NCBI RefSeq assembly: GCF_947568905.1
Contig: NC_079166.1
Location: 9,982,001-10,046,000, forward strand
DNA: 64,000 nt
Direction: 5' to 3'
From: Ostrea edulis
Taxonomy: Eukaryota
Below, in pieces: positions 1 through 62,490 of this stretch. The translations under genes and the position numbers were made by a program. Below the pieces are notes generated by a model. The model was not told the DNA's origin and searched no databases. It worked only from the letters and a program-made list of their open reading frames with translations. Position 1 is the first letter of the stretch; each line of letters opens with the position of its first letter.

Positions 1-2
1 TA

Positions 3-1013
3 AAGGACCTATCAAAGAAGTATGTGCCCATTGATGATGCTGGGGAAATAGTTGAGGAAGTGTTTTTTGGAGGCAAGTAAAAATTAATAGGGGAACATTT
101 CAAGAGGAACATCAACAGCAGGGCTCAAAATTAACATATGCTTATCACTGACTGGATAAAAGTCTGGCAGACTGATTGACATTTGTTTTAGTAAGTCCGA
201 TGGGACTGGTTAATTTTCTAAAACGTCATTTTGAAAAACTTGTTTAAACTCTGCTTTTGGCATTCCTCTATAGACATCAGACAAACCTGATTAGTGTTGC
301 AAAATTGTCCAAGGCACAGAGTTAAATCCCATGATTTTATTTGAATAACATTAACGAAATATCTTTAATTATATCTGGAAAACCCTGGTGGACTGGTAAA
401 ATTTTCTGCAGACTTGTTTAAAATAAATCGTATCAGTCTGGCTAAACTGGTGATATGAAAAGTTAGTTTCAAGCCCTGATTGCAGTTATATAGATTTGTT
501 AGAATTATTGTGATTTTTATTTGAAATGAAATATTGAAAAAGATAGTGAAGAGTAACTCATGTAGTGTTTTTTTTCCACTTTAAAGGAGACAGATTGACT
601 GATGAGAGAATACAGAGTGCCCAAGAAGCTATGACCAATAATGAAAATCCATTGGATAGGTTTGAAGGATTCATTTCCAAAATTGAAGATTTTCATCGGC
701 TCATGAACTTCCTCGAGGTAAATTAAGTCAAACAGTTTCTTATGTGCACTTAAAAATAAAAGATATAACAGATATTTATCAACTAAGATTTCCTTTTTCA
801 TAAAGTGAGGTTCACTTTTTAGCTCACTTGCTGTCCATCGTCTGTCTGTAAACTTTCACATTTGTGACTTCTCCAGAACCACTGGGCCAATTTCAACTAA
901 AACTTGGCATAAAGCATCAAATTTATTCAACTGAATTGCAACTGAGTTGCAACATCCTTGTCCAAGGGGAGATAATAGCAAAATTACATTAACAAGTTTT
1001 AAAAATCTTCTCT

Positions 1014-1051
<38 letters not shown>

Positions 1052-2604
1052 ACATCCTTGGGTGAAGGGGATTCAAGTTCATTCAAATGAAGGGTCATGC
1101 CCCCTTCAAAGGGGAGATAATCACAAAAATAGGGTGGGGTCATTCAAAATTCTTCACAAGAACCAATGGACCAGAAAAGTTAACATTACATGTAAGCTTC
1201 CCGACATAATGGAGATTCGAGTTTCTTAACATCATAATCCCCAGGGGTAAGATGGGACCACAATATAGATCACAATTTTACATGCGAATATGCAAGGTTA
1301 CTAAAGTGAGCGATATGATCCATGGGCCTCCTTTGTTCACATGATATCAGGTGAGCGATGTGGTATGATCTTGTTAATAATGTTGAACTTGATATGAATA
1401 TAGGTAAAAATAAACCAATTATTTTTTTTTTCAGGCAATTGTGTTGCAAACATACAGCACCCAGTCAGCAAATGACAGAGGAACAGTGTATTATTATAAG
1501 AACATATTAAATGCACGCAATGTGAAGGGGAAAGTAAAGAACTCTTACAGAGGATATAAAATGCTATACCGTACTATATTTGATGCTATGTGTTGTGCAT
1601 TTTTCTTGAAAGAGTTTGGACTTCTTAACTTAACAGAGAGCATACCACTGCCTGATGAATTCTCCAAATGGACAGGAGAGGAAAAAATACAGTGGATGAA
1701 TAACATATGTGAACGAATTGTGAACAAGTGGTTTTTTGGAGACAGTGACTTGTTTGAAGAGTTGCGACAAGTATTGTCTGATCCAGATCATGAAGAAAAT
1801 TATTGGTTCGGGAACTTTAAAGATGGTCGCTTTTCCTGCCACTACTGTGAAAAAACTTACTGTCATATCAAAAGTGCAGAATTTCATGAAAAAGAAGTCC
1901 ATGGCCATTCCAAACCAGCATTACGAAAAAGTAAACAAGCAAACCTATTGCAAGATGAACTTTTTGATTATTTGATAGCCCTTTTCCGTCTGTCAGCATT
2001 ACATCGAAATCTTGATACGGCAGTGGATATGGCTGATGGCTATAGATCTATTCGCTCAGCTAAGTACGAGACCCCGCTGTACAACAAGACCCACAAAACA
2101 AAATATCTTATCGGCAGCATCCATTTAACAGGCCTCGTATCAGGAACCTTGCCGCCTCCTCAAACAGAGAGACTTATTGCAAATCGCTGTATAAATTTGT
2201 CAGGTGGGAAGAACTCGAACATGGCACTAGATGAGTATGTAGAACTAGTCAACAGAGATACAAAAAACACTTGTTCTGGATTCCAAACAAAGGAGAGTAT
2301 AATTGCGCACTCGAAACAATTTCCTCTTTTAATCAAAGCTGTGAAAAATTTGGACATGATTAATGATGTACATAGAAGAAAAGGATTCCACAACATACCT
2401 TCATATAAATCTGATGTTCGGAAGATTGTACAAGACCTTTTTGACATCGATGGTTTTTCCCAACATAAAGGACGCAAGCTCAAGTGCAGAGAACTAGTCC
2501 AGAAAAGCAATCCATTTGCAGACAGTTATAAACAGTTGGTGAACATGATATACAGACATAAACCTTTACTTCCATTCCGTCGATTAAGGAATAAACAACT
2601 ATAA
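3..2604 (+). CDS. DUF6589-like / Academ-type DDE transposase, 5'-partial, exons <3-72, 587-717, 1435-2604 (456 aa visible)
   Basis: The splice chain keeps frame: GGAG|GCAAGT (GC donor) to aag|GAGACAGA, then GAG|GTAAAT to tcag|GCAATT. It gives FFGGDRLTDERIQSAQ...EDFHRLMNFLE-AIVLQTYSTQSANDRGTVYYYKNILNARNV and later DEYVELVNR, matching the GDxLT / xxFH / S..D.GT / N..D..E..NR motifs I recall for DUF6589. Includes a C2H2 finger, CHYC-x12-H-x4-H. No stops or frameshifts. Confidence 0.8.
816..1337 (+). mobile_element. Helentron-type non-autonomous element (HINE-like, oyster satellite-type internal units) in transposase intron 2
   Basis: Starts tttttagctcac, has a (g/c)tctgtctg microsatellite, internal repeated ctccagaaccactgggccaatttcaaccaaacttggc units, and ends catgggcctcctttgtt. 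Related copies lie at 20950-21290 and 37640-38418. Confidence 0.7.
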
Positions 2605-3234
2605 TGATGTGATTGTTTATCTACCTGGTACATGAGACATAAAATCAAATTAAATATTATGGAGGATTATCGCCAAGACTTGTCCAATGTACATGCACAC
2701 ATATACAATGTACAGTAATTAAATTTTCAAATGGAATAAACATGGATTTAATCAATAACATCTTTGATAACTTACAATATTTGAAGATCCAACTTGGTGT
2801 TGGCCATATTTTTAAAAAAAAAATAAAAATCAAATTTTGATTACTCATTGCTGTTGGTCTTTGTTTGTCGTCGTGCGTCATCCATTAACAATTTTACATT
2901 TGTAACTACTTCTTAAAAACTACAATGCCAATTGTTACCATTTTTGCCCCAGACTTGATCAACCCAAAGAAAACGGGTCCCAGAAAAAATGTGTTGTTTA
3001 CTGTTTCTTCACAAATCCCAACATTACTCTGTAATTTATATATGCTTCAATTCATTCTGGTACACATAATTATAATTAGTATCATGCAGAAGAAAACAGG
3101 ACATTGTCTTTTAGAGACTGATAAAACAGTTTTGTATCTGATCATTAGATAACTGTTGCATTGTTATGAAACTGTAAACAATACAATTTTTACTTAAAAA
3201 ATAAACACTAACAAGTTTTGTGTAAATTTGAACC

Positions 3235-4538
3235 TTAAGTTGATTTAATATCATCAAGATCCTCATCAGATTCATACTCATATGATACAGTATCACTGTC
3301 ACTGCTTGAGGTTTCCATTACATGTACATCATCTAAAGACAGATTTGTCATATATTTTTCTAAAATTGTCGAAGAACATGAATTACAGGAACATCCTGTA
3401 TCACAAATGTCACAACAAGTATGTATTCTGGTACCTTGTACCAGCTTTAACTCGCTCTCCGAAAGAAATGTCTTGAGCAGTTGCAATCTTCGGCAATCAG
3501 TTGAAGTGAGGAAGTCTTTGACGTCCTGGTCAACATTCCGTAGTTGTTGACCATAATACATCAAAAAGGCACATGATTGTTCCCCATCCCTTCCCACTCG
3601 CCCTGTTTCCTGGACAAAGTCTATCAAACACCTAGGAGGTCCATAAATCATAACATTGTGACATGCATAAACATTTACACCCATTCCCAGTGCACTGGTA
3701 GCAACAATAATGCGCAAAACACTGTCCTCAGTCAATTTTTCAAGGGTTTTCTTTTTTTTATCTTCTGTTGTTTCAGAATGAAACATTTCAACCATGTTTT
3801 CAATGTTAGTAACATCTGATAGTTCAGACACTATGAAGTTGTACACACGCCCAACATCTCTTATTGAGTTGCAATAAAATATTGTCCGTGGGAACTCCTT
3901 TTTTAAATCTCGAAATGAGTCCAAAATCCACAACAAAGAACTTTCAATGTTAGGGTCTACTTTCTTCACAATGTACTTGATGTTTTCTTTATTTGGGGAA
4001 ACTGTAATGTTCGTGTAGTCCTTCAGTCCCAAAACTTCTATCACCCTCTTTTTAATTGTCTTTGTGCAAGTCGCGCTTAGTGCTAATAATGATGCCTCAG
4101 GAAAGTACGATCGGATCTCTCCAACACGCCGAAACCACTTTCGGAACACTTTATCCTCCTTATCTGCTTCTAGACCACCCCTAAATTTGATAATAAAGGT
4201 TATGAATAAGAATCTAAATTAAAACCATTTAAACATGTTTTAAAAATTTTAACTACCAACATTCCTTCCACTTTTTCAAAAAAATGGGTTGCAGTACACT
4301 AAGCAACAGTTTTTAATGATGTTTAAAATTATTTTTACATATTCTAAATTCAAGACATCCAAGTATGTCTATAAAAATCAAACAAAATATGAGAGTTAAG
4401 ATAATTATAGTTTAGGGAATTTACAATGCTGATAGTTGGTTGGGGAATATGATTACATATTTTGCATAAAGACCTAAGACACCTTTGGAGCAAAATATTG
4501 TGTCAATGATGTGTGAGCAATTTGTTCGTCAATAAATG

Positions 4539-4569
<31 letters not shown>

Positions 4570-5468
4570 AATATCAATATATTGATGGAAAAAATAGCAC
4601 TGACAGTATACAATATCTCATTTGATTTATTAACTCAGGTTGTTTTAAAGAACTCTCATAAATGTAAAATACATGAATAGGAAGACATTACCATGTGACA
4701 ACTGTGTGGAATTCATCAACTACGATGACAGTTACATTAAGTCTTTGTATTGTTGATCTCCATTGGCTGTCTCCAACTAATGACTCGGGGGATGCATAGA
4801 TGATGTCTACTTTTCCTGCCTGTATCAATTCATCGGTCTCCTTGTCTGTGCCTGGAGCATTCAAGAGTGACTGTGTTTATAAATTCTTAACATTTCCAAC
4901 ACAATATTTAAAGAATGAAATGATAACTATAAATGAACCAGTTCAACAGTGAACTTGGAATCAAATTTGCAGTGCAACATATAGTGGATAACACATTTCA
5001 CGCAAGAATTTCTTATGTATTGTTAACGGTCTACTGCTTGTCAGAAGCATATATAAGTATGATGACTATCCATTATTATTTAGATGATCCTTAGTGAACT
5101 TCGATTTAAGACCGGCCATGAGACCCAATTTCAATTAAATTATATAAATATAAACGAATAAATATATACATACCTTTAAAAGCAGCAGTTACTAATCCTA
5201 TGGAAGTTAATTTTCTGACTTGGTCTTGCATAAGAGACACCAGAGGACAGCAAACAATTACTTTCCCGAAGCTATCATCACGGAGTAAAGCTCTCTTCAC
5301 TGGCAAATACGCTTGAAATGGGAGCGATTTTCCAAAACCTGTTGGTAACACGGCGACACAGTCTTTTTTATCAAGCACGCAGTCCAAAATCATCCGCTGT
5401 TCATCCTTTAAACACTTAACGCCAAATTTTTTCAAAACTTCTTCCACTACTCGTTCAATATCCGCCAT
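3235..5468 (-). CDS. RecQ-like SF2 helicase, 466 aa, exons 5468-5174, 4851-4692, 4180-3235
   Basis: GT-AG introns join in phase (295+160+946 = 1401 nt). Motifs: LPTGFGKS (I), PLVSLMQDQV (Ia), VVDEFH (II), W..FRKWF aromatic loop, LSAT (III), IFYCNS (IV), ATSALGMGVN (V), QETGRVGRDG (VI), and an RQC zinc region (CRR...CCDIC) followed by an acidic tail. No room for winged-helix or HRDC domains. Confidence 0.9.
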
Positions 5469-5744
5469 TTTTGTTTATACACCGCGCTTCATTTGAAACG
5501 CGTTATCTGATTGGATCAAATTATGATGCAATATGCAAATACAAAGTTCACCAGAACATGACCTCTTATGGGGAGTTATCAGATCCTATATATATAATAA
5601 TATAGGTCTGTACTTTAGTCAGATTGGTATGTATATATCCGAACATCAATTAAAAATGTATAATAGTGAGATAAATGGATATACATGTATATTGAATGTA
5701 GTAAGGAGATAGAGAAAACGAGAGACAGAAAAAAATCAAAATAG

Positions 5745-8436
5745 TTACCCTCCTAAAATCCAGTAATTAAATCCAGGTTCCGCCGCTACATTTTCATTTG
5801 ATTTCTTCCTTTCAACAGCGTCATAGCACTCTGGGTCTACGATGAAACATTGAGGTCATACAATTCAACATTAAATCATTTTATCTATATTTAATATATG
5901 TATATAGTGTAAACAAAATTTAGAAAACTCGGTTACATCTCAGTTACAAATCGGGAATTAACGACCACTTTTATTGTTGTACTGAAGAGCACAATACCGT
6001 TTTACTTAAGTAGAAATACAAATGTATGTTACCCTATCAAGCTTGGGTCATGTAGAACATAAAGTGTTTTCATGTTTATTTATGAAGAGTATTGCATGTA
6101 TGCAAGCTGTTGTAAGAATTTCCCGAAATATTTAATGTCTACGAAAAGGCTTGTTTGTGTCAAGAGGTGATAAGGATTAGAGAAAGATACAGTTCTTCTG
6201 AAGAGATATTATAGTGCGAAATAGCAGACACCATACATCTTTGTTTGTTTTTTGGTTATGGGTATGCTTGATGTGAACAACAGTGAAAGGGAGTATAACC
6301 CCTGTCACAAGCTAAGTTGCTCAACTTTGGCGATTAGATAATTAGATAAAGGCACTTTGTATTGTACTCTGGATATTATCCCTTTCGTCAGTATTTTGTA
6401 AACGACATACATTTTTAAACATCGATAAAGTATTGGTATGAATCAATATATCGATATAACACACAACTGATCGCGAGGTACCGACGGGGAGAGGCAATTT
6501 TCTCCTCTGGGTACTTTCAACTTGAATTGAATTTTGTAACCAAAATTGGTATTAGATAAATGTCATGGGATCCATTTGTCCAACGCATTGCAAATATGTG
6601 TACATATAAAATAACAATGCTTAGCTGACACAATTAATTTGGAGTGACTTCGAAAGAAATAAGCCTTTTTTAAAAATTCATTCTTGAAGATCTAAAAAAG
6701 GACTTGCATTTTTTTGGACAAATGTCTTTATCAAACCAGTGTGTAATTTGGATACCCTATAGTGGGAGTCACAATGTACAATGAAAGGTGGAGATAACGA
6801 ACAGTGATCAATCTCATAACTCCTATACGCAATACAAAATAGAGAGTTGGGCAAACACGGACCCTTAGATATACCAGAGATGAGATCAAGTGTCTAGCAG
6901 GATACTTTCTCTATTACATTTATCTGCATATTAAGTGAACCCAAACGTTTGAAAGGTCTGTAATTTCAACTGATTGATATATGGGAGAGGCTTACTCCTC
7001 CTAGCCACCTGATCCCACATCTGGTATGTTTAGGGGTGCGTGTTTGCCCAACTTTGTATCTTTTATACTTTCTAGGAGTTATGAAATTAATCACTGTTTG
7101 TTATCGTCACTTTTAATGGAACAAATACAGTGTATATATCATATTGAAAGCCGAAAAAAAAAATTCAAAATTAAAAGTAGAGTGATTTTCATGCCATCAA
7201 TTTTACAAAACACTTCTATAGCAATGTTCAAACCAAACTAATATACAACATACATTTGTATGCATCGGTGGACAGGTAGTAATTTGGGGGACATTCCATG
7301 CATCTTGCGTTTTGATGGTTGCTACGTTGGATTGGTCTATCCCCTTTATTAATCTCAGCACACTTGCGACCTGACAAGTAGTAAAACGTTATAATAAAAA
7401 ATACCATAAACATTTTAAGCAGTAATATGTTTGCGTGTTATCAAAGTTTCATATACTAAGTTTTAATCAACGTTACCAATTATAAGAACTTCAGGTGCAC
7501 ACGTCTCTATTGTGGCATTCATGTGTGGACTGACAACGCAGTGGTAAGTAGTTTTACTACACCACGACGTCCACTTCTCACACTCTTTTAACTGTTTTCT
7601 CTTCTCATGCTGATCTTTATCCCGAGGACAGTCTGGGACTTCTACTGCAGTAGTGTGTGCGATGCGAGCACACTTATTTTCCTTCTATGATAAAACAAAT
7701 CCGCAAATCATAGTCAAAATTCAAAAAGATCAGATAAATATAGTTGTCGATAATCAGAGGACAACTTCTGTGAAAGAAAAACCTCAGAACATCCAAAAAC
7801 GACTGGGCTTTTATGCCATTATAAACATATATTGCTTCAAATGAAACTTGGCGTTAATCATATCTTGTGATCAGTCATCCCATAAGCACGAGTTTTATTC
7901 CAAACAAAAGTACTCTGAAGTTGACATTAAACAGATGCTGGACTTTCTTATTGACACTATCTACGTGGTCTTTTGTGATCAGGTCTTAAAGTCGTCATTT
8001 ATCACATTCTATGGTAGTTATAATGTTCTAATTTGCAAATGCAACTTAGCTGTCATTAGATAGAATACTGTCTAATGGGTTTCATACCAGATATTATAAA
8101 ATTTGAGGGTTTGTCTCCCAACACTAACTCGAAACTCTGTTACATGTATCAAGAAACGCCTTAACACGCATTACACTTTGCAGTCAACCACACGCTGTGA
8201 TTAGCCTATTTGACTGGTTGAAATTCATCAGAATGATATAGTATCCTTCAGTTTTAACTATTGATAATGTTAAGAGAAAGACAGAGTTATTTAAGATATT
8301 GAACAGTGCACGTAAAGATTTTATCTGTTACAGAAAATAAACACATATTATTCTAGAGCCTCAGAATAAAACAACTTACCTTCCCACAACCTACGATTAA
8401 CATGCATGTGAGGACCAGTGGTATTGAAAAGTGCAT
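5745..8436 (-). CDS. Cysteine-rich secreted protein (bivalve expanded uncharacterised family), 157 aa, exons 8436-8380, 7684-7477, 7370-7254, 5836-5745
   Basis: In-phase GT-AG chain: signal peptide MHFSIPLVLTCMLIVGCGK, then KENKC...CPRDK...C...C...YHCVV...ETCAPEVLIIG, RKCAEIN...C..CPPNYYLSTDAYK and YPECYDAV. The last exon runs into a MITE-like end and stops. Paralog of 42450-49853. Confidence 0.75.
6783..7115. mobile_element. Two short Penelope-like 3' end fragments in opposite orientation
   Basis: Contain gaaaggtggagataacgaacagtgatcaatctcataactcc (minus) and cacctgatcccacatctgg...ggagttatgaaattaatcactgtttgttatc (plus), the same tail as the 40330-40950 element. Confidence 0.7.
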
Positions 8437-8694
8437 CTTGTTATCACCTAAAACAAACAAAATAATTCACGAATCAGCTTTTAAAAATCCAAAAATTAAA
8501 AGTTGCAGCCACACTACTATAGTATCGGGCATATTCGGTAAGCCATTGTACATGTAATACAACACATTTAATATACATGTAGCTTCATTGACTATCCGGT
8601 TTTCGAAAACGATACACATTTCTAGCATGTTCTCGTATACGAATATTTGAGGCCTATACTCCAAATCAAAAATTAAAATTGTATATAGAGTTCA

Positions 8695-8900
8695 TGGCGG
8701 GCGTAACCGGTCGACAGGGATGTTAACTCCTCTTAGGCACCTGATCCCACCTCTGGTGTGTCCAGGGGTCCGTGTTTGCCTAACTATCTAGTTTGTATTG
8801 CTTTTAGGAGTTATGAGATTGGTCACTGTTTGTTACCTTCACTTTTCATTGCTTATAGGAGTTATGACATTAATCACTGTTCGTTATCTTCACCTTTCAT
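8695..8900 (+). mobile_element. Penelope-like 3' end fragment with duplicated tail
   Basis: ggcgggcgtaaccggtcgacaggg...ccacctctggtgtgtccaggggtccgtgtttgc; the terminal ~50 bp occurs twice. Confidence 0.7.
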
Positions 8901-9864
8901 ATATACAGTAACTGATATATATTTTTCAGTAGACATTCCTCGAACAATATTGTGTTAAAGAATCATTTCCTAAACATACATTTACATTCGTTAATGGATG
9001 CAATACATGATTTCATTTCTCGATGGAGGTACTGTTGCGCAAATGTGATATATTATAGATGATTCACAAATAAGTAGAGAGTTTGAAACATTGCTTACTT
9101 ACAAACTGAAACAACTTACTTTTATCATTATCATATCATTGTTTTTAGAATATATAAGCGCAAATACTGCAATATCACAATGTATATAAATATTAAAATT
9201 CTGCTTTTCTGATATTCCATATACAATGGATGGTAAGTAGTATGTTTTTTTCTATTAACCTGAACTTTGATTTATATTCAATAGAAGTACATTAATATAT
9301 TACCACTTGATGGAGATTTTAGCACTTTATTTATGATATAGCCGGTGGCATTTGAAATAGCATTACCTCCATCAAATTTGGTAATTTTAACCGTATAACG
9401 ATTTTAAATCAGTATTTGGGTCTAAATTCTTCATTCTCAATTCATAAATTTCGCAATTTTGGTAGGGACACACTTTACTAAATAATCTCCATCCATTTTA
9501 TCAACTATGTCAAAATTCACTAGACATATAGGTCACGTAACGCGACGCCTAAATCAAAAATTCACAATATTGGTAGATGTCATCTATACTTCTTTAAACA
9601 ATATGCTCATGGAGGTAGAAGACATGATTTATGAAGTTTTAAAACAACAGGTTGTTTCATTAAGAATAATAATGAACCAGGTTCTCTAAATGTATGAAAA
9701 AAGTTTACTGTTGAATATTTCAGAGTGCAGTTCTCCTTTGTAAATATAAGTTCTGGGAATTAGGGATGTAAATCATGCACATTTTTAAATTAATATTTGT
9801 GTTGGGTTATATTAAAACACCATCACTGCATATAGGTGCTATTCCGATTTTAAGTCTTATATTA

Positions 9865-10025
9865 ACCCAGTAGCTAAGTACTTCGTCACTGGCTTGAAAA
9901 TATGGATGCATATTTAATTGCTGTTATAAAATTTAGAAATTCATTTCAAAATTAAGGATTATCCCCCTCACGCATTGCTCTTATCCTTAGACGAATTTGA
10001 CTTCACTTTTTTGGCACACTGTTAT
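9865..10025 (+). mobile_element. Fragment of the hammerhead-carrying dispersed repeat family
   Basis: cccagtagctaagtacttcgtcactggcttgaaaata...aattaaggattat is nearly identical to 32385-32510 and 52223-52380. Confidence 0.7.
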
Positions 10026-10029
10026 TCCC

Positions 10030-10900
10030 TTAAGGATATGAGGAACGATGATCACGTGATGGTTGCGAATTTATTATAGAGGGCGAAGCCCTCTCACGGC
10101 CCGAAGGGCCGTGAGAGCGGAGCTCTCCCTATAGGTAACACGTATATACATGTTTAAAAGGGAAATATAGGAAAATAATGAAAAATTAAACCATACCCTA
10201 AGGAACTTGGAAAGTTTGGTACCAATGGCGTCGATTCGAATATTAGCGCGTGGACATATATTCCTCCATTTTGAATCTCGTCTACCCTAGTTCACGTCGT
10301 TCTGAGATGTTACATAAAATCAGTAAAAGCATGTAAATCTTATTTTCTTAATCACATATAATCACTCCACGATTAAGTTTTTTGTTGTGGTTCAAACGCT
10401 ATGTTTGTAAATTTGCTAAATAACGACGCTGAATATGACGTCACAATGTACTGTTTACATCAATTGCGTTATATTTCCCGCGTTCAATATAAAGGCGGAT
10501 CAAATGTCCAAAATTAGGATGCTTTGATACAGCTCGGTCCTCGTGCTAACTTCGGTTTGTTTTTGTCCTGTTTAGGATATAGATACTAATGCCAAACCTT
10601 TCTTGCTTCGCCCTCAAACACGGTCATGCCGTAAAACATATTAAATTTAGAATAGGACGCAGCATAGTTAAAGCTTCCCGAGAAAAATCACAATGCTGTA
10701 CAGACACACTATATGACGTCATGATAAAACAGTACGTCACGACGTTGTATCGCGGGGAAAATGTCATCATATTTTTTCGTAATTTGCTACCGCTGTCAAG
10801 TGTCATGTGTAAATCTATTGATTGAATTCTTGTCAAATGATAATTTTTTATTTTATTTCATAGTGATTACAAGTCTCTTTTTCATATACATTGCATATAT
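10030..10900. repeat. Unclassified dispersed repeat with terminal hairpin cluster; relative at 54860-55130 in opposite orientation
   Basis: The reverse complement of 10760-10810 (ttgacagcggtagcaaattacgaaaaaatatgatgacattttcc) matches 54911-54958 (ttgacagcggtgataaataacgaaacaatactttgacatttcc). tgacgtca-rich blocks are shared. Confidence 0.5.
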
Positions 10901-12409
10901 TATTTATATGTATAGTATGCGCCACAGTAATTTTGATAGTATAGCCTATATAAGTCACCGAACCGTCTGTAAGAAATGATTTAGTGCAAGTGTAAGATGA
11001 TGATCGTTTGTTGATATTTACTATAGTAGTGTGAAAGTAGAACTGGACACACATTTCTCCGAATCTTGCTTGGGAAACGTACGAACTATTTAGGTGCTTT
11101 TATAATCGATCCTTGTTTGCGAAAAATACCCCCCCCCCCCTTATGATGACAATCGTTACTTTTGGTAAAATATTAACGTCCATTCTAGGAATGTTTAATT
11201 TTTGCAAGCATTTTCATGTAAAAATAAGTACGCTTTATCTCTCAAACTATTTCATATTCCAAATTATTTTACTAACTTTACGAAACACTGCTGCGGAAAT
11301 GGTAACTAACGTTAAAAATATGACACATGTCGGAATGTATGCGAGAAGCAGACGTGTGAAAAAGAAAAAGGTGCAAAGTCAAAATATGTGCGATACATAA
11401 ATACCTTGAAAAATAACATGGAGAATATCGAGTCAAGCGACATTAGCTACCATGGCCGCGGAAATGATGTTGATCTTGTAAAGGAAGTAGTAGCTCATAT
11501 TGACGTTAACTAGACCTAACCCGTGGTTTGAAAGAAGACGTATTGTTTAGAGCTAGACTAGACGTTTTGTTCGAAGCCATGTTTAATATATAAATGTATA
11601 TTTAAAAACATTAATTTTAATTTGTTTTCATTAACTCAATTTTTGTTCCATAATTATGAAAATTCTAAATATTTCAATAGGTTCAAAACAAATATAGTTT
11701 TTAACAATGTATTCCAAAACAGGCACGAAGAATTAGGCTATCCCCCCCCCCCCCCCCCCAATGAATTGAGACCGTCCCATCCCCCATTACTTTTAACAGT
11801 AGTTGTACATGAAAAGAATATATAAGCTTAAAAGTTATTAATAACAAATAGTTCGCCAAGCCTAACCCCAAGTGAACATATCAATGTATAACTTCAAGGA
11901 CGCCTACCTCAAAATCAAGATTACCTTCACCCCTTCATATTTCTACAGGAAGTCAGGTATATGAATAGCTTTTGATTGCAGTGTTTGCAAAAAATTTCAT
12001 TGACAAGTTTTTGAGCAGTGCTTCATTTAGTATCTGGACTACCCTGTTTTTGAGTATCAATTTCCACCCCAAATCCTTAAATTTTCCCAATTTCTTATTA
12101 TATGGTTATGTTTAAGCATGTTATTATCATATATTTTATTTTTTGCATATATTCTAAAGATTATTGTAAAAGATATAGATAAAAATTCATTAATTTTTTT
12201 TTTTTTGAATTGAAAATCGGAATGATCTTGAAACATTCACAATTTTCGAAAAGGGGGGTAATTCAAAGCTTGTTATCTCCCTTGTATACCTAGAAAGTGG
12301 CCATGAAATTTATACACATTGTACAGGACATCCTGATGGTGCTTCATGAAAAAAAGAAAAAATATTCACTGACGAGTTATTTTTGGCCACATCGTCCCGC
12401 ATGTCCCTA

Positions 12410-30595: not shown

Positions 30596-31087
30596 ACAAA
30601 CTTTGCCAAAAGGAAAATGCGCATCATTGATGTCGAATGTAAACTCGAAGCTTTGGGGTTACGTTGATTTTTTGAGGCATTGTGTACGATATTTTTAACT
30701 GGTTTTGTAAATACCTCAACATACATGTTACAGTGTACGAATGTTTTAAAATTTTCAAGTGTGGAATTTGAAACAAAAATCAGTTATTATTTTGTGCAGT
30801 TGATGAATGCAGAAAGACACAGCTGTGTGTTGTAGAATTCCAATATGCTACAATGACCTTTGTGGAACAGTTGTAATTTACAAAAGAAAGGAAATGTATT
30901 GTTCTTTTAAAATTGAATCAAAAGTGGTATTTTGTATGTTAAAAATCTTACTTTTATTGCTCAATGGAAACACCGTAGTATATTCTTGTTTGAAAAACAG
31001 ATATTCTAAAGTTTATCATTATTTTGAATCATAAAAACATTATTAGATATATTGCAGAGTAGATGGTAAAGAGCAGAATCGTGCAAG

Positions 31088-31365
31088 GTGAATATAACGA
31101 ACAGTGATCAATCTCATAACTCCTACAAGCAATACAAAATAGATAGTTGGGCAAACACGGACCCCTGGACACACCAGAGGTGGGATCGGGTGCCTAGGAG
31201 GAGTAAGCATCCCCTGTTGACCGGTCACACCCGCCGTGAGCCCCATATCCTGATCAGGTAAACGGAGTTATCCTCAGTCAAAATCAGTGTGCCAAGAACG
31301 GCTTAACAATCGGTATGAAACACGTCAGACAGCATTTGACCCAATGCGAGGTTGTAAACCCTTTC
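31088..31365 (-). mobile_element. Penelope-like 3' end fragment
   Basis: Near-consensus tail aacgaacagtgatcaatctcataactcc...gggcaaacacggacccctggacacaccagaggtggg. Confidence 0.8.
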
Positions 31366-36891: not shown

Positions 36892-37319
36892 TAAGGATTA
36901 ATTCATGGACGTGTATTACATCCCTATATCTATCCTCAAATGTGGTCACATTAATTTATTGTCGCATCTATGAACAACAGAACACTTAAGCATTGGTTTC
37001 CGTTTGAATACTTTCCTGGTACGAAATTAGTAAATTCCAAAATAAATCGAACAACATGAGATGACAACAAACACATATTGAAAACATTTTGCAGACAAAG
37101 TTCTCGCAGCACCGAATTAAATTTCTTTAACAATTGACATATAGTTATGTACACGCATTATCCACGATGACATGAAATTCTTTAGAACGACACATAAATT
37201 ATGATATTCAGTATGTTTGTAACTATTAACCAATTCCAATGTATGTGAAGTAATTCATATTCTTAACATAATCCATTTTGAAGATGTGCGTATTTCCGAT
37301 TTTTATAAAAATATTCAAA

Positions 37320-37500
37320 ACTCCGTTTACCTGATAAGGATAAAGGGCTCACTGCGGGTGTGACCGGTCGACAGGGGATACTCACTCCTCCTAGGCACCT
37401 GATCCCACCTCTGGTGTGTCCAGGGGTCCGTGTTTTCCCAACTATATATTGTTTGTAGGAGTTATGAGATTGATCACTGTTTGTTATCTTCACCTTTCAT
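37320..37500 (+). mobile_element. Penelope-like 3' end fragment
   Basis: ctccgtttacctgat...ccacctctggtgtgtccaggggtccgtg...gatcactgtttgttatcttcacctttcat. Confidence 0.8.
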
Positions 37501-37639
37501 TCACGAGGCTCGATCATAGATAACCGAGATTTATTAATTACAGAATGACCCAGGTAACCCATAAAAAAGAAAATCGGGTATATTCATATTGTATACATTT
37601 TGATTATAGTGGAAAATAAACTCCATTGGGTATTTTTTT

Positions 37640-40329: not shown

Positions 40330-40950
40330 ATATGAAGATAACGAACAGTGATCAATCTCATAACTCCTATAAGCAATACAAAATAGATAGTTGGGCAAAC
40401 ACGGACCCCTGGACATATCAGAGGTGGGATCAGGTGCCTAGGAGGAGTACGCATCCCCTGTCGACCGGTCACAACCGCCATGAGCCTTGTATGTTGATCA
40501 GGTATCCGGAGGTATCCGTAGTCAAAATCAGTGAGCCAAGAACGACCTAACAATCGGTATGAAACACGTCAGACAGCGTTTGACCCAATGATAAGTTGTA
40601 TTGGCGAACTAGATCGTTATAACGACCATAGAAGTTGCGACATGCTGACTTCAATCGAAACTGTTGAAACCCCTGTACCATGAACTTGTTTGTCAGTAGC
40701 TTACCTCGTTCTAAAAACTTATACGCAGAACAAGCTATTGCATATCGAATCAGTTGAGAGATATAAACACCATATGCAGGTAAGAATGGAACATCGCCAC
40801 ATAAATATGGGAAGTTGTCGATGAAGTAGCTGAAATCATCCCGTCTGTCATGTAGTTGAGTTGTCAGTTTGCCGTTAATATCTACTTTCAATAAATTATC
40901 TAAGTATGAAGCAGAACTGGACGACTCTGTGGTGTCTTTTTTATCCTATT
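40330..40950 (-). mobile_element. 5'-truncated Penelope-like retroelement: RT C-terminus plus 3' tail
   Basis: ORF 40547-40891 GKLTTQLHDRRDDF...NFPYL...PAYGVYISQLIRYA..C matches the RT thumb region of Penelope-like elements. The ORF ends without a C-terminal GIY-YIG domain (Naiad-like arrangement; inference). Confidence 0.75.
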
Positions 40951-42449: not shown

Positions 42450-45400
42450 TTATACAATAGTATTATCTGTTAGATTTTCTTCTTCCTTCGTATCTTCGTG
42501 ATTGGATGTACATACTTCTTTTGACCAACCTGAAATACATAATTTACAAGGATGACAATAATATTTCTTGGTTGTTTATTTCATTTAGTATAGTAGACCA
42601 TGTGTATATAAACATGACTTACTGTGATTTTTGTACTTCTTGACAAGACGCAAGGCGATAGGACTTATGCATAAAATTCCAATAATGAAAGGTACCGCAA
42701 CAATAATCGGCAGGGGTACGTGCAGCTCGTCGTCACTGTCGTTTTCATGGTCCCTGCATTAACCATATAAAGATTGTTTCAAAAATTGGTTGTTGTTTTT
42801 TTTAAAAGCATGGGTAAATAACTCTTGGTAAAATTTATCGAAATCTAACGAGAAATGACAGAAATATTAGATTATTTTTCATCATATCTAAGTGATCTGC
42901 ATGCGAGATACCCCAACTAGAGATACATCAATATCAGAACTGGAACCATTATAGAGTATTAGATTGATATGGAATATGCTATGAGGTTAATTGATTCCGA
43001 CATGTAAAAGGATACTTAACAAAATACATTTGACCTTATACCATATTTTATCTTATTGGTACTGTGTACCGATATAAGAACATTTCGATATCAGTGACAT
43101 TGAAACATCCTACCCTTAATAAGAAAATAAGAAACATATGTAGGAAAAAGGTGTTCTCAAATCATTATTATAGGATGTCCTTTAATCCTATGGATTTTTA
43201 TATCTAAAGCGAATCTACTTTGGAGGGCTAAAATTGTATATAATTTGCAACGGTCATCGTTCTTTACTTTAGTGTTTATTAAGAGTATAACAATATAGGC
43301 ACACTATACCTTGTGTATATACCAGTAGTGTTTATTAAGAGTATAACTATATAGGCACACTATACCTTGTGTATATACCAGTAGTGTTTATTAAGAGTAT
43401 AACTATATAGGCACACTATACCTTGTGTATATACCAGTAGTGTTTATTAAGAGTATAACAATATAGGCACACTATACCTTGTGTATATACCAGTAGTGTT
43501 TATTAAGAGTATAACTATATAGGCACACTATACCTTGTGTATATACCAGTAGTGTTTATTAAGAGTATAACTATATAGGCACACTATACCTTGTGTATAT
43601 ACCAGTAGTGTTTATTAAGAGTATAACAATATAGGCACACTATACCTTGTGTATATACCAGTTGTGTTTATTAAGAGTATAACAATATAGGCACACTATA
43701 CCTTGTGTATATACCAGTAGTGTTTATTAAGAGTATAACTATATAGGCACACTATACCTTGTGTATATACCAGTAGTGTTTATTAAGAGTATAACTATAT
43801 AGGCACACTATACCTTGTGTATATACCAGTAGTGTTTATTAAGAGTATAACAATATAGGCACACTATACCTTGTGTATATACCAGTAGTGTTTATTAAGA
43901 GTATAACAATATAGGCACACTATACCTTGTGTATATACCAGTAGTGTTTATTAAGAGTATAACTATATAGGCACACTATACCTTGTGTATATACCAGTAG
44001 TGTTTATTAAGAGTATAACTATATAGGCACACTATACCTTGTGTATATACCAGTAGTGTTTATTAAGAGTATAACAATATAGGCACACTATACCTTGTGT
44101 ATATACCAGTAGTGTTTATTAAGAGTATAACAATATAGGCACACTATACCTTGTGTATATACCAGTAGTGTTTATTAAGAGTATAACTATATAGGCACAC
44201 TATACCTTGTGTATATACCAGTAGTGTTTATTAAGAGTATAACAATATAGGCACACTATACCTTGTGTATATACCAGTAGTGTTTATTAAGAGTATAACA
44301 ATATAGGCACACTATACCTTGTGTATATACCAGTAGTGTTTATTAAGAGTATAACAATATAGGCACACTATACCTTGTGTATATACCAGTAGTGTTTATT
44401 AAGAGTATAACTATATAGGCACACTATACCTTGTGTATATACCAGTAGTGTTTATTAAGAGTATAACAATATAGGCACACTATACCTTGTGTATATACCA
44501 GTAGTGTTTATTAAGAGTATAACAATATAGGCACACTATACCTTGTGTATATACCAGTAGTGTTTATTAAGAGTATAACAATATAGGCACACTATACCTT
44601 GTGTATATACCAGTAGTGTTTATTAAGAGTATAACAATATAGGCACACTATACCTTGTGTATATACCAGTAGTGTTTATTAAGAGTATAACTATATAGGC
44701 ACACTATACCTTGTGTATATACCAGTAGTGTTTATTAAGAGTATAACAATATAGGCACACTATACCTTGTGTATATACCAGTAGTGTTTATTAAGAGTAT
44801 AACTATATAGGCACACTATACCTTGTGTATATACCAGTAGTGTTTATTAAGAGTATAACTATATAGGCACACTATACCTTGTGTATATACCAGTAGTGTT
44901 TATTAAGAGTATAACAATATAGGCACACTATACCTTGTGTATATACCAGTAGTGTTTATTAAGAGTATAACTATATAGGCACACTATACCTTGTGTATAT
45001 ACCAGTAGTGTTTATTAAGAGTATAACTATATAGGCACACTATACCTTGTGTATATACCAGTAGTGTTTATTAAGAGTATAACTATATAGGCACACTATA
45101 CCTTGTGTATATACCAGTAGTGTTTATTAAGAGTATAACTATATAGGCACACTATACCTTGTGTATATACCAGTAGTGTTTATTAAGAGTATAACTATAT
45201 AGGCACACTATACCTTGTGTATATACCAGTAGTGTTTATTAAGAGTATAACTATATAGGCACACTATACCTTGTGTATATACCAGTAGTGTTTATTAAGA
45301 GTATAACTATATAGGCACACTATACCTTGTGTATATACCAGTAGTGTTTATTAAGAGTATAACTATATAGGCACACTATACCTTGTGTATATACCAGTAG

Positions 45401-48400
45401 TGTTTATTAAGAGTATAACTATATAGGCACACTATACCTTGTGTATATACCAGTAGTGTTTATTAAGAGTATAACTATATAGGCACACTATACCTTGTGT
45501 ATATACCAGTAGTGTTTATTAAGAGTATAACAATATAGGCACACTATACCTTGTGTATATACCAGTAGTGTTTATTAAGAGTATAACTATATAGGCACAC
45601 TATACCTTGTGTATATACCAGTAGTGTTTATTAAGAGTATAACTATATAGGCACACTATACCTTGTGTATATACCAGTAGTGTTTATTAAGAGTATAACA
45701 ATATAGGCACACTATACCTTGTGTATATACCAGTAGTGTTTATTAAGAGTATAACTATATAGGCACACTATACCTTGTGTATATACCAGTAGTGTTTATT
45801 AAGAGTATAACTATATAGGCACACTATACCTTGTGTATATACCAGTAGTGTTTATTAAGAGTATAACTATATAGGCACACTATACCTTGTGTATATACCA
45901 GTAGTGTTTATTAAGAGTATAACAATATAGGCACACTATACCTTGTGTATATACCAGTAGTGTTTATTAAGAGTATAACTATATAGGCACACTATACCTT
46001 GTGTATATACCAGTAGTGTTTATTAAGAGTATAACTATATAGGCACACTATACCTTGTGTATATACCAGTAGTGTTTATTAAGAGTATAACTATATAGGC
46101 ACACTATACCTTGTGTATATACCAGTAGTGTTTATTAAGAGTATAACTATATAGGCACACTATACCTTGTGTATATACCAGTAGTGTTTATTAAGAGTAT
46201 AACTATATAGGCACACTATACCTTGTGTATATACCAGTAGTGTTTATTAAGAGTATAACTATATAGGCACACTATACCTTGTGTATATACCAGTTGTGTT
46301 TATTAAGAGTATAACTATATAGGCACACTATACCTTGTGTATATACCAGTAGTGTTTATTAAGAGTATAACTATATAGGCACACTATACCTTGTGTATAT
46401 ACCAGTAGTGTTTATTAAGAGTATAACTATATAGGCACACTATACCTTGTGTATATACCAGTAGTGTTTATTAAGAGTATAACTATATAGGCACACTATA
46501 CCTTGTGTATATACCAGTAGTGTTTATTAAGAGTATAACTATATAGGCACACTATACCTTGTGTATATACCAGTAGTGTTTATTAAGAGTATAACTATAT
46601 AGGCACACTATACCTTGTGTATATACCAGTAGTGTTTATTAAGAGTATAACAATATAGGCACACTATACCTTGTGTATATACCAGTAGTGTTTATTAAGA
46701 GTATAACAATATAGGCACACTATACCTTGTGTATATACCAGTAGTGTTTATTAAGAGTATAACTATATAGGCACACTATACCTTGTGTATATACCAGTAG
46801 TGTTTATTAAGAGTATAACTATATAGGCACACTATACATTGTGTATATACCAGTAGTGTTTATTAAGAGTATAACTATATAGGCACACTATACCTTGTGT
46901 ATATACCAGTAGTGTTTATTAAGAGTATAACTATATAGGCACACTATACCTTGTGTATATACCAGTAGTGTTTATTAAGAGTATAACTATATAGGCACGC
47001 TATACCTTGTGTATATACCAGTAGTGTTTATTAAGAGTATAACTATATAGGCACACTATACCTTGTGTATATACCAGTAGTGTTTATTAAGAGTATAACA
47101 ATATAGGCACACTATACCTTGTGTATATACCAGTAGTGTTTATTAAGAGTATAACTATATAGGCACACTATACCTTGTGTATATACCAGTAGTGTTTATT
47201 AAGAGTATAACTATATAGGCACGCTATACCTTGTGTATATACCAGTAGTGTTTATTAAGAGTATAACTATATAGGCACACTATACCTTGTGTATATACCA
47301 GTAGTGTTTATTAAGAGTATAACTATATAGGCACACTATACCTTGTGTATATACCAGTAGTGTTTATTAAGAGTATAACTATATAGGCACACTATACATT
47401 GTGTATATACCAGTAGTGTTTATTAAGAGTATAACTATATAGGCACACTATACCTTGTGTATATACCAGTAGTGTTTATTAAGAGTATAACTATATAGGC
47501 ACGCTATACCTTGTGTATATACCAGTAGTGTTTATTAAGAGTATAACTATATAGGCACGCTATACCTTGTGTATATACCAGTAGTGTTTATTAAGAGTAT
47601 AACTATATAGGCACACTATACCTTGTGTATATACCAGTAGTGTTTATTAAGAGTATAACTATATAGGCACGCTATACCTTGTGTATATACCAGTTGAAGT
47701 CATCCGGAGTACAGGGAAACAACTTTGATCTAAAACGGATTGTGGTTAGCGTGTTAGTGATGATAAAACATTTAGGTTGTCCTCCCCGATACAAGTTTAT
47801 CAAAATAAACCTGAATCAGACGAAGGAATTAAGATTAGTAAAAAGGAATTTCTTTTCATATCTATTTTTTTCAGACCATGACGCTAGCTTACTGTCTAAC
47901 GTATAGTATTCATAAATATTTCTTAATGTCATCAACATAATTTATAAATATATTTAGGTCATACACACACTTAAACTGCAGCTAAATTTATTAAACAATG
48001 AATAAGCTAACAAAACAATGAACAAAATTGTGTTTAATGAATATAATCACGATTAGTTCGTATGATCTTCATTATATTTCCTCTGCATCGTTTTCATTAT
48101 TATGTACTATTTTTATTATTACCATTATATCTGCATGCTGTTTTCTTTTCTAGTTCTCTTTAACTGTTTTTATCATGCATCTTTTAGGTGGATTCCATTT
48201 AAATTGTTAATGGGATTTATACATTGCTTCGTAATCATTTAAAAATGAATCAGAAATCAAATATCAAGTTGGTTATAAATGCGAGCTCAGAATTCATCAT
48301 TATGATACAACTTTTGTAGAAATGCTATGATAACAATCTGAATGATTATTATTTGAAGCAATGTACTATCAGAAGCGTAATCGTAATTTTTTGTTATACA

Positions 48401-62084: not shown

Positions 62085-62490
62085 CTTCTCCATCGTCAAC
62101 CTCCCATATTTGTGTAGCAATATTCCATTGTCACCTGCATATGGTGTTTATATTTCTCAACTGATTCGATATGCAATAGCTTGTTCTGGGTAGCTACTGG
62201 CAAACAAGTTGATGGTGCAGGGGTTTCAACAGTCTCGATTGAAGTCAGCATTTCGCAAATTCCATGGTCGTTATAACGATCTAGTTCGTCAATACAACCT
62301 ATCATTGGGTCAAATGCTGCCTGACGTGTTTCATACCAATTGTTAAGCCGTTCTTGGCACACTAATTTTGACTGCGGATAACTCCATTTATCTGATCAGG
62401 ATATAGGGCTCCCAGCAGGTGTGACCGGTAGACAGGGGATGCTTACTCCTCCTTGGCACCTGATCCCACCTCTGGTGTGTCAAGGGGTCC
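62085..62490 (+). mobile_element. Penelope-like RT C-terminal/3' fragment
   Basis: PYLCSNIPLSPAYGVYISQLIRYAIAC followed by the family tail, truncated at ccacctctggtgtgtcaagggg. Confidence 0.8.

What the first reader, a model, noticed from the sequence alone, without database searches (positions are those of the whole stretch)
1..5588. Apparently intact AcademH-like transposon carrying its own minimal RecQ helicase
Seen: two convergent spliced genes, both with open frames and canonical splice phases, 630 bp between the stops, and a TAG-starting candidate terminus 120 bp upstream of the helicase ATG. Known: AcademH elements (Kojima 2020) pair an Academ transposase with a RecQ-like helicase in animals and fungi, so the class is described, but the role of the helicase is untested as far as I know. 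Inferred: every other autonomous-type element in this window is decayed, so this copy may be young or active.
Basis: partly seen in the sequence, partly recalled or inferred. Interest (0 to 1): 0.75.

Follow-up and report, generated by a model that had tools for sequence, protein, structure and literature searches.

The report
Young intact helicase-carrying oyster transposon
The stretch is the right-hand half of an undamaged, very young, multi-copy 11.7-kb jumping gene of the European flat oyster that carries its own RecQ-like helicase; the kind (AcademH type) is already described, so it is useful for experiments but is not a new class.

Summary
Window 1-5626 is the right 48% of an 11,728-bp DNA transposon in Ostrea edulis (OX387706.1, about 9,975,899-9,987,626).

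- **Genes.** Both convergent genes are real. One is a DUF6589 transposase with an RNase H-like DDE fold, of which only the last three exons lie in the window. The other is a 466-aa RecQ-like helicase.
- **Splicing.** Spliced RNA contigs confirm all four in-window introns. One is GC-AG, not GT-AG.
- **Terminus.** The element ends at 5626, with 92-bp TIRs starting CAATCTGACT. The TAGGATCTG... string is an inner repeat of the TIR.
- **TSD.** The TSD is GTATGTATA (9 bp), not tatatataa.
- **Copies.** Six full copies at different loci are 99.64-99.97% identical. Each has a perfect 9- or 10-bp TSD.
- **Intactness.** The window's copy has both reading frames open (973 aa conceptual, 466 aa).
- **Relatives.** The same layout occurs in a limpet and an acorn worm.

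This fits AcademH, but Repbase homology could not be tested. Earlier follow-ups of this scan already reported AcademH-type elements on other DNA of this genome (s1-301790, s1-306966 and others). It is a new member of a known kind, of modest interest as a probably active model.

The parts
1..72 (+). 3' part of transposase exon 5 (the exon starts 58 bp left of the window); ends ...FFGG, phase 1
   Evidence: Open frame 3. RNA joint 70/585 with slack 3 fits only GC..AG at 72/587. Matches P0338 residues 237-281.
73..586 (+). Transposase intron, GC-AG type
   Evidence: Spliced out in RNA contigs of X15 and X16. Donor GCAAGT, acceptor AG.
587..717 (+). Transposase exon 6; holds the second catalytic Asp in GGDRLT (D282 of P0338)
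   Evidence: Pfam DUF6589 positions 111-153. D282 present in 43 of 46 aligned relatives.
718..1434 (+). Transposase intron (GT-AG) holding a nested high-copy short repeat at about 868-1130
   Evidence: RNA joint 715/1433, cut +2. DNA depth up to about 370 in bin 1001-1200, against about 18 in the rest of the element. The repeat is present in all six copies.
1435..2604 (+). Transposase last exon (389 aa plus stop). Holds the insertion domain with a conserved C2H2 finger and the catalytic Glu (LDEYVE).
   Evidence: Pfam DUF6589 5.5e-14. C459, C462, H475, H480, D590 and E594 nearly invariant. Covered by RNA contigs.
2605..3234 (.). 630-bp spacer between the two stop codons (3' UTRs)
   Evidence: RNA contigs reach 2643 on the transposase side.
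3235..4180 (-). Helicase exon 3: RecA2 domain, Zn-binding Cys cluster, acidic tail, stop
   Evidence: Pfam Helicase_C 6.3e-15, RecQ_Zn_bind 20.3 bits, below its cut-off of 25. 100% match to P0122.
4181..4691 (-). Helicase intron 2 (GT-AG on the - strand)
   Evidence: RNA joint 4179/4691, cut +1, in X15 and X16.
4692..4851 (-). Helicase exon 2 (motif II, DEFH)
   Evidence: Pfam DEAD. X16 contig pieces 4691-4850 joined to 5173-5466.
4852..5173 (-). Helicase intron 1 (GT-AG on the - strand)
   Evidence: Skipped in X16 contig 10 but retained in X15 contig 4.
5174..5468 (-). Helicase exon 1 with the ATG at 5468 and Walker A (PTGFGKS)
   Evidence: Pfam DEAD 2.4e-09. 100% match to P0122 residues 1-99.
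5535..5626 (-). Right terminal inverted repeat, 92 bp, starting CAATCTGACTAAAG; two ATCTGAYWA motifs 40 bp apart.
   Evidence: Inverted match to the left end in all six loci. 88 of 92 bases match, and the first 64 are identical. 219 and 179 reads have loose ends just behind 5626.
5627..5635 (.). Target-site duplication GTATGTATA (9 bp); its partner lies just left of the element's left end, outside the window

Best explanation
Window 1-5626 is the right half of a full-length autonomous cut-and-paste DNA transposon of the AcademH type in Ostrea edulis. The element is 11,728 bp long.

Layout: 92-bp TIR; a transposase gene of seven exons reading inwards; a 630-bp spacer; a three-exon RecQ-like helicase gene reading inwards from the other end; 92-bp TIR; 9-bp TSD.

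Shown:
- The boundaries, TIRs and TSDs.
- Multiple near-identical copies at unrelated loci.
- Open frames in this copy.
- Splicing of the four in-window introns.
- An RNase H-like transposase fold with conserved Asp, Asp and Glu.
- Conserved helicase motifs.
- The same two-gene layout in a gastropod and a hemichordate.

Inferred:
- The DDE transposase (D128, D282, E594 of P0338) binds the ATCTGAYWA motifs in the TIRs, excises the element, and inserts it with cuts staggered by 9-10 bp.
- The helicase is an obligatory accessory. It probably unwinds or remodels DNA at the staggered target or at the donor ends, or channels gap repair. This is the role an XPG nuclease would play in the sister lineage AcademX.
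- The family was active very recently and may still be active.
For: - **Identity and extension.** L003 equals the window at 100% over 15,468 bp and extends it leftwards.
- **Copies.** Six copies of 11,714-11,743 bp are 99.64-99.97% identical. L002 and L003 differ by 4 substitutions.
- **TSDs.** Each copy has a perfect TSD of 9 or 10 bp in different flanks. AcademH is reported to make 9- or 10-bp TSDs (PMC10045372, citing Kojima 2020).
- **TIR.** 88 of 92 bases match.
- **Read ends.** 219 and 179 raw reads have loose ends behind 5626 with varied continuations.
- **Copy number.** Internal depth is about 17-21, against about 1.4 expected for a single copy. At least 11 annotated helicase loci and at least 11 transposase loci lie on at least 5 chromosomes.
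- **Open frames.** The 7-exon conceptual ORF of 973 aa is open in L001, L002, L003 and L006, and the helicase is open in all six. The ORF aligns end to end with the 983-aa P0294.
- **Transcription.** RNA joints are seen at 72/587, 717/1435, 4180/4692 and 4851/5174.
- **Transposase fold.** The AlphaFold model has pLDDT 91.3. The best structural matches are all DDE transposases: P element Z 9.5, Hermes 8.4, ISCth4 7.8, RAG1 6.8.
- **Catalytic residues.** D128, D282 and E594 are conserved.
- **Helicase.** RecQ hit at 9e-37. Walker A, DExH, motif VI and the Zn cysteines are invariant across 25 helicases of 31-53% identity.
- **Same layout elsewhere.** Patella has similar termini and a 9-bp TSD. 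Saccoglossus has 86-bp TIRs. A family only 27% identical also has the layout.
- **Literature.** Academ elements are expanded in bivalves and annotated in O. edulis.
Against: - Direct homology to Repbase Academ or AcademH transposases was not tested. Kojima 2020 and Repbase are not held, and no XPG-fused DUF6589 protein was seen.
- The exon 1 to exon 2 splice that gives 973 aa is inferred. NCBI models instead split the gene into a 210-aa N-terminal product and 713-807-aa DUF6589 products.
- The RNA contigs come from 'organism B' and differ from the window at about 1% of exon positions. They show transcription of a near-identical relative, not of this copy.
- Insertion polymorphism was not tested.
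- TSDs of 9-10 bp and long TIRs also fit Mutator-like elements.
Confidence: 0.87

Rival explanations
1. The element is real and young, but this family is not autonomous. An extra small exon shifts the frame after exon 1, so only a truncated N-terminal protein and a separate N-terminally shortened catalytic protein are made. The copies would then have been moved in trans by a sister family with a fused transposase of 928-983 aa.
For: NCBI models give a 210-aa product ending 5 nt into exon 2, plus 713-807-aa DUF6589 products, and never a fused one. Sister O. edulis families have fused proteins, P0294 and P0295.
Against: Exon 1 and exon 2 are both phase 0. Joined, they give an open 973-aa frame colinear with P0294 over residues 13-970. 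Exon 1 carries only one substitution among the six copies. The sister-family transposases are only about 47-51% identical, so cross-mobilisation is doubtful.
Confidence: 0.15
2. It belongs to another DDE superfamily, for example a Mutator-like element that captured a RecQ helicase, and not to Academ.
For: TSDs of 9-10 bp and long TIRs are also typical of MULEs (my knowledge). ISCth4, an IS256-family transposase, is among the structural matches. Academ homology was not tested directly.
Against: There is no MULE or Mutator Pfam hit. Only DUF6589 is found in every protein scanned. The helicase is linked to the transposase in families down to 27% identity and in another phylum, so it is ancestral and not a recent capture. 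That combination is the published definition of AcademH.
Confidence: 0.08
3. It is a pair of host genes (a cellular RecQ paralogue and a domesticated transposase) spread by segmental duplication.
For: Both are annotated as ordinary genes (RecQ-like; uncharacterized LOC) by NCBI.
Against: Identity stops exactly at the TIR ends at six unrelated loci, and each has its own 9- or 10-bp direct duplication. Most coding differences between copies are non-synonymous, and one copy has a stop (Y363*). The window's copy sits inside another gene's span.
Confidence: 0.02

Closest known systems
AcademH DNA transposons (Kojima 2020, Mob DNA 11:15)
   Same: A DDE transposase plus a separate SF2 (RecQ-like) helicase gene, TIRs, TSDs of 9 or 10 bp, and low to moderate copy number in animals.
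   Different: This particular O. edulis family was not compared with Repbase. It is 11.7 kb long with 92-bp TIRs starting CAATCT, has a large first intron, one GC-AG intron, and a repeat nested in an intron. It is much longer than the mean of 5.6 kb for curated bivalve Academ consensuses (PMC10294476).
AcademX (Academ with an XPG nuclease)
   Same: Presumably the same transposase superfamily. The accessory DNA-repair-type enzyme sits in an analogous position.
   Different: No XPG domain is found here. The TSD is 9-10 bp rather than 3-4 bp.
Cellular RecQ helicases (bacterial RecQ, WRN, BLM, RECQ1, RECQ5)
   Same: Two RecA-like domains with all helicase motifs, plus the RecQ Zn-binding cysteine cluster. 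About 30% identity, E 1e-37 to 1e-20.
   Different: Only 466 aa. The matches cover only the helicase core and Zn region, and no RQC or HRDC Pfam hit was reported for the exon 3 product, so no winged-helix or HRDC domain was detected. It has an acidic tail, is multi-copy, and is encoded inside a TIR-bounded mobile element. It is not closest to any one cellular orthologue.
P element, hAT (Hermes) and IS256 (ISCth4) transposases
   Same: RNase H-like catalytic core interrupted by a large helical insertion domain between the second Asp and the Glu (Z 7.8-9.5).
   Different: There is no detectable sequence similarity (10-13% identity), and the TSD length and accessory gene differ.

Membership tests
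AcademH | Transposase homologous to Academ-superfamily transposases (Repbase; Yuan-Wessler Academ DDE profile) | not testable with these tools
   Repbase and Kojima 2020 are not held. Indirect evidence only: Pfam DUF6589, a DDE transposase fold, and Academ reported as abundant in bivalves and in O. edulis.
AcademH | A helicase encoded in addition to the transposase | tested here: met
   466-aa RecQ-like helicase inside the TIRs. The linkage is conserved in Patella, Saccoglossus and a distant family.
AcademH | Target-site duplications of 9 or 10 bp | tested here: met
   Four copies have 9 bp and two have 10 bp. Patella has 9 bp. The criterion is taken from PMC10045372.
AcademH | Terminal inverted repeats and multiple dispersed copies | tested here: met
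   92-bp TIRs. Six full copies were fetched, and read depth suggests roughly 10-20 copies.
AcademX | XPG nuclease domain fused to the transposase; TSDs of 3-4 bp | tested here: not met
   No XPG Pfam hit in any exon or relative. TSDs are 9-10 bp.
Mutator-like elements (MULE) | MULE/Mutator transposase domain (PF10551, PF20700) | tested here: not met
   Only DUF6589 was found at E up to 0.1. The TSD length and long TIRs alone would fit.
Cellular RecQ orthologues | Single-copy, syntenic host gene with RQC and/or HRDC domains, clustering with one orthologue group | tested here: not met
   At least 11 near-identical loci lie inside TIR-bounded elements. The PDB and Pfam matches cover only the helicase core and Zn region, and bacterial RecQ and WRN have similar E-values. 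No tree with cellular RecQs could be built.

The most novel reading that the evidence does not exclude
The family is active today in flat oysters, and its transposase is regulated by alternative splicing. Including a small frame-shifting exon would yield only a 200-210-aa N-terminal zinc-finger protein, a possible repressor like the truncated P-element proteins. Skipping it would yield the 973-aa enzyme. The RecQ-like helicase would be strictly required for the 9-10-bp staggered integration. That would make this the first tractable system for helicase-assisted DDE transposition.
Probability: 0.12. Interest if true: 0.6.

Novelty: new member of a known kind. Interest (0 to 1): 0.33.

Why it matters
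What the helicase does in AcademH elements has, as far as I know, not been tested experimentally. An intact and apparently very recently mobile family gives a concrete construct for excision and integration assays with and without the helicase. It has defined 92-bp TIRs, a defined transposase and helicase, and several natural variants, including a stop-codon copy. For oyster genomics, these elements are annotated as ordinary 'RecQ-like' and 'uncharacterized' genes and sit inside host genes, so they inflate gene counts and are likely structural variants between individuals. The class itself is already described, and this scan had already found such elements elsewhere in this genome.

Tried and rejected
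The terminus at 5588 and the TSD tatatataa are rejected. Both lie inside the TIR.
- **First model of helicase intron 1.** My first model (a phase-0 acceptor at about 4868) did not fit. The RNA contigs and protein P0122 give 4851/5174.
- **GT donor for the first in-window transposase intron.** Rejected. Only GC-AG at 72/587 keeps the frame and fits the RNA joint.
- **Kojima 2020 and Yuan & Wessler 2011.** Neither could be read. A paper search for DUF6589 gave one irrelevant mention. The supplements of PMC10799480 hold no DUF6589 or Academ entry.
- **Link from DUF6589 to AcademX through XPG fusions.** None was found among 10 long relatives or among homologues of the fish/cnidarian branch.
- **The 210-aa NCBI model.** An attempt to reproduce it from an exon at element position 1060-1117 gave 200 aa, so the model's exact exons remain unresolved.
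- **Insertion polymorphism.** It could not be judged. Flank depth in the raw reads was too low, at 0.5 and 3.2.
- **Joined sequences.** Searches were made exon by exon by reference, or with database proteins identical to the spliced products (P0122, P0338). The 973-aa conceptual frame was only checked for stops and compared locally in scripts.
- **N run in Saccoglossus.** The run of N at the right end of the Saccoglossus element was left as it is.
Full report
**What is in the window**

Pfam scans of the open frames, exon by exon, found DUF6589 on the + strand. Window 587-717 matches profile positions 111-153, and 1435-2601 matches positions 161-373.

On the - strand the scans found DEAD, Helicase_C and a sub-threshold RecQ_Zn_bind hit.

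The DUF6589 match starts at profile position 111, and the frame runs off the window start. The window therefore begins inside the transposase gene.

**Whose genome, and the extension**

The helicase exon 3 product is 99-100% identical to Ostrea edulis proteins annotated 'ATP-dependent DNA helicase RecQ-like'. Their 90% cluster holds at least 11 RefSeq accessions on at least five chromosomes.

I fetched the loci of three of these proteins, which gave six loci. L003 is the window's own locus. It is 100% identical over 15,468 bp, which places window position 1 at OX387706.1:9,982,001. L003 also supplies 6.8 kb to the left of the window.

The other five loci match the window only over 1-5626, at 99.6-99.96%. 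Their flanks are unrelated.

**Boundaries**

In all six loci the similarity stops at the same base. Both ends carry an inverted 92-bp repeat that starts CAATCTGACTAAAG. In L003, 88 of the 92 bases match and the first 64 are identical.

Each copy is flanked by a perfect direct duplication:

| Locus | TSD | Length |
|---|---|---|
| L001 | CAATTGCCTT | 10 bp |
| L005 | ATTTACTGAT | 10 bp |
| L002 | GCTCGTGAC | 9 bp |
| L003 | TATACATAC | 9 bp |
| L004 | CAGCACATA | 9 bp |
| L006 | TTCTCGAGT | 9 bp |

For the window's copy the TSD reads GTATGTATA on the window's + strand, at 5627-5635, and again just left of the left end.

Raw WGS reads agree. In two individuals, 219 and 179 reads have loose ends directly behind 5626, with varied continuations.

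It is not the end. The proposed TSD tatatataa is TIR sequence.

**The whole element and its age**

The six copies are 11,714-11,743 bp long and 99.64-99.97% identical pairwise. L003 differs from L002 by 4 substitutions and one gap column.

The window holds element positions 6103-11,728, which is 48% of the element.

Read depth inside the element is about 17-21 after reading about 1.3-1.4 Gb of each run. For a genome of roughly 1 Gb (my knowledge), that means on the order of 10-20 copies. This is consistent with the number of annotated loci.

Depth at the TIR tip and the number of loose ends are several times higher than full-length copies explain. This hints at shorter derivatives that keep the TIRs. 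That stretch is AT-rich, so the evidence is weak.

**Gene models**

*Helicase.* The exons are 5468-5174, 4851-4692 and 4180-3235. Together they encode 466 aa, identical to P0122.

*Transposase.* In element coordinates (window position + 6102), my model has these exons:

- 171-710
- 4435-4603
- 4793-5091
- 5464-5946
- 6045-6174
- 6689-6819
- 7537-8706

All splice sites are GT-AG except the GC donor after 6174. The model gives an uninterrupted 973-codon frame in L003.

*RNA support.* Spliced contigs of two runs from two studies show joints that fit 72/587 (GC-AG), 717/1435, 4180/4692 and 4851/5174. This confirms every in-window intron. The contigs come from 'organism B' and differ from the window at about 1% of exon positions. 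They therefore show that a near-identical relative is transcribed and spliced, not this very copy.

*The upstream part of the model* rests on three points:

- Database proteins of the family: P0338 (713 aa) matches the exons of L003 and L002, whose CDS are identical; also P0350 (807 aa) and P0312 (764 aa).
- Phase-0/phase-0 compatibility of exons 1 and 2.
- An end-to-end local alignment of the conceptual frame with the 983-aa protein P0294 of a sister O. edulis family: 47% identity, residues 13-970 against 9-980.

NCBI's own models split the gene into a 210-aa N-terminal product and 713-807-aa products. Which isoform is actually made is therefore untested.

**Integrity across copies**

| Locus | Transposase frame | Helicase |
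|---|---|---|
| L002, L003 | Identical coding sequences for both genes, open | Open |
| L001, L006 | Open, with 5-7 amino-acid changes | Open |
| L004 | In-frame 3-bp deletion | Open |
| L005 | Premature stop (Y363*) | Open |

Most coding differences are non-synonymous. This is as expected for copies drifting neutrally after insertion. The window's copy is thus intact as far as sequence can tell.

**What the proteins are**

*Transposase.* An AlphaFold model of P0338, built with a 46-sequence alignment, is confident (pLDDT 91.3, pTM 0.88). Foldseek's best hits are Hermes, ISCth4, the P element transposase and RAG1. VIA-align gives these scores:

| Match | Z |
|---|---|
| P element transposase | 9.5 (333 residues aligned) |
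| Hermes | 8.4 |
| ISCth4 | 7.8 |
| RAG1 | 6.8 |
| Tn5 | 6.4 |
| Transib | 6.4 |

These scores are middling. However, the top of the list consists only of RNase H-like DDE transposases with an insertion domain.

D128 (GDNWD), D282 (GGDRLT) and E594 (LDEYVE) are conserved in 38-45 of 46 relatives. So is a C2H2 finger (C459, C462, H475, H480) in the insertion domain. Assigning these residues as the catalytic triad is an inference.

*Helicase.* It matches bacterial RecQ (9e-37), WRN (5e-34), BLM (1e-28), RECQ1 (2e-26) and RECQ5 (8e-21) over residues 7-361 or up to 408. Across 25 small helicases of this type from molluscs and Saccoglossus, at 31-53% identity, the following are invariant or nearly so:

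- Walker A
- DExH
- motif III
- motif VI
- the Zn-binding cysteines

The helicase function is therefore under selection. No winged-helix or HRDC domain was detected: the PDB and Pfam matches cover only the helicase core and the Zn region.

**Relatives elsewhere**

- **Patella caerulea.** The locus has a 204-aa gene, a 752-aa DUF6589 gene and a convergent 429-aa helicase. They lie between inverted repeats that begin CAATCTGATTAAAAC / CAATCTAATTAAAAT, flanked by a 9-bp TSD, GGCCAATGA.
- **Saccoglossus kowalevskii.** The locus has the helicase, an unannotated convergent DUF6589 region and 86-bp TIRs. Its right end abuts a run of N, which I left alone.
- **A distant family.** A DUF6589 protein only 27% identical (P0193) also has a convergent DEAD/Helicase_C neighbour.

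The pairing is therefore ancestral and not a recent capture.

**Comparison with what is known**

AcademH is defined by an Academ transposase plus a helicase and by TSDs of 9 or 10 bp. AcademX has an XPG nuclease and TSDs of 3-4 bp (PMC10045372 and PMC10799480, both citing Kojima 2020). All features testable here are met.

Direct homology to Repbase Academ could not be tested, because neither the paper nor Repbase is held. No XPG-fused DUF6589 relative was found.

Academ elements are reported as specifically expanded in bivalves (PMC10294476). They are annotated as 0.25% of the O. edulis genome, the highest of the five oysters compared (PMC9679248). Polymorphic Academ insertions are reported in another bivalve.

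Earlier follow-ups of this scan already reported several 11.3-11.8-kb AcademH-type elements on other pieces of this genome.

**Mechanism (inferred)**

The transposase binds the paired motifs in the TIRs, excises the element, and integrates it with cuts staggered by about one helical turn.

The helicase may open or remodel the target or the ends, or it may direct repair of the gaps or of the donor. This parallels the XPG nuclease of AcademX.

**Verdict**

This is a real, intact, very young member of a known kind.

Noticed in passing
window 868-1130: A short high-copy interspersed repeat is nested in the transposase's last intron and is present in all six copies. DNA depth reaches about 370, against about 18 for the element. 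RNA contig depth there is 1,400-2,400.
   Followed up: partly
window 43102-47700: A long, very homogeneous tandem array with a 56-bp unit, at least 80 copies, 98-100% identical.
   Followed up: no
window 5535-5626 (TIR): Read depth at the TIR tip (about 120-145) and the loose-end counts (219 and 179) are several times what 10-20 full-length copies explain. This suggests shorter non-autonomous derivatives that share the TIRs. The AT-rich sequence may inflate the depth.
   Followed up: partly
L003 20450-20512 (element 1060-1117); L001 element 1096: A small exon used in NCBI models shifts the frame after exon 1. L001 and L005 have ATG where the other four copies have ATA (element position 1078), which explains the 807-aa versus 713-aa annotated products.
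   Followed up: partly
window 5447 (RNA run X16) and 4967: Organism B's transcript contig carries a 10-nt insertion 21 nt after the helicase ATG, which would shift the frame. A 7-nt intron insertion (TGGGCGG) is polymorphic among copies in the DNA reads.
   Followed up: no
window 5593-5626: Eight reads of X22 join 5626 to 5593 with CC between them, as if some copy had a short partial duplication of the TIR tip. This is unexplained.
   Followed up: no
window 6775-7123, 8717-8851, 31082-31356, 37319-37504, 40333-40701, 49196-49387, 62192-62490: One family of interspersed repeats of 130-300 bp occurs many times in both orientations in the window and in the flanks of other loci.
   Followed up: no
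L003 7033-22234: The window's copy lies within the span of a host gene model on the helicase's strand (475 aa, weak OSTbeta hit), apparently in an intron.
   Followed up: no
L006 4404-5489; L010 18800-19792: Other transposase genes lie next to copies of the element: a Mutator-domain gene near L006 and a DDE_Tnp_1_7 (piggyBac-type) gene just outside the Patella element.
   Followed up: no
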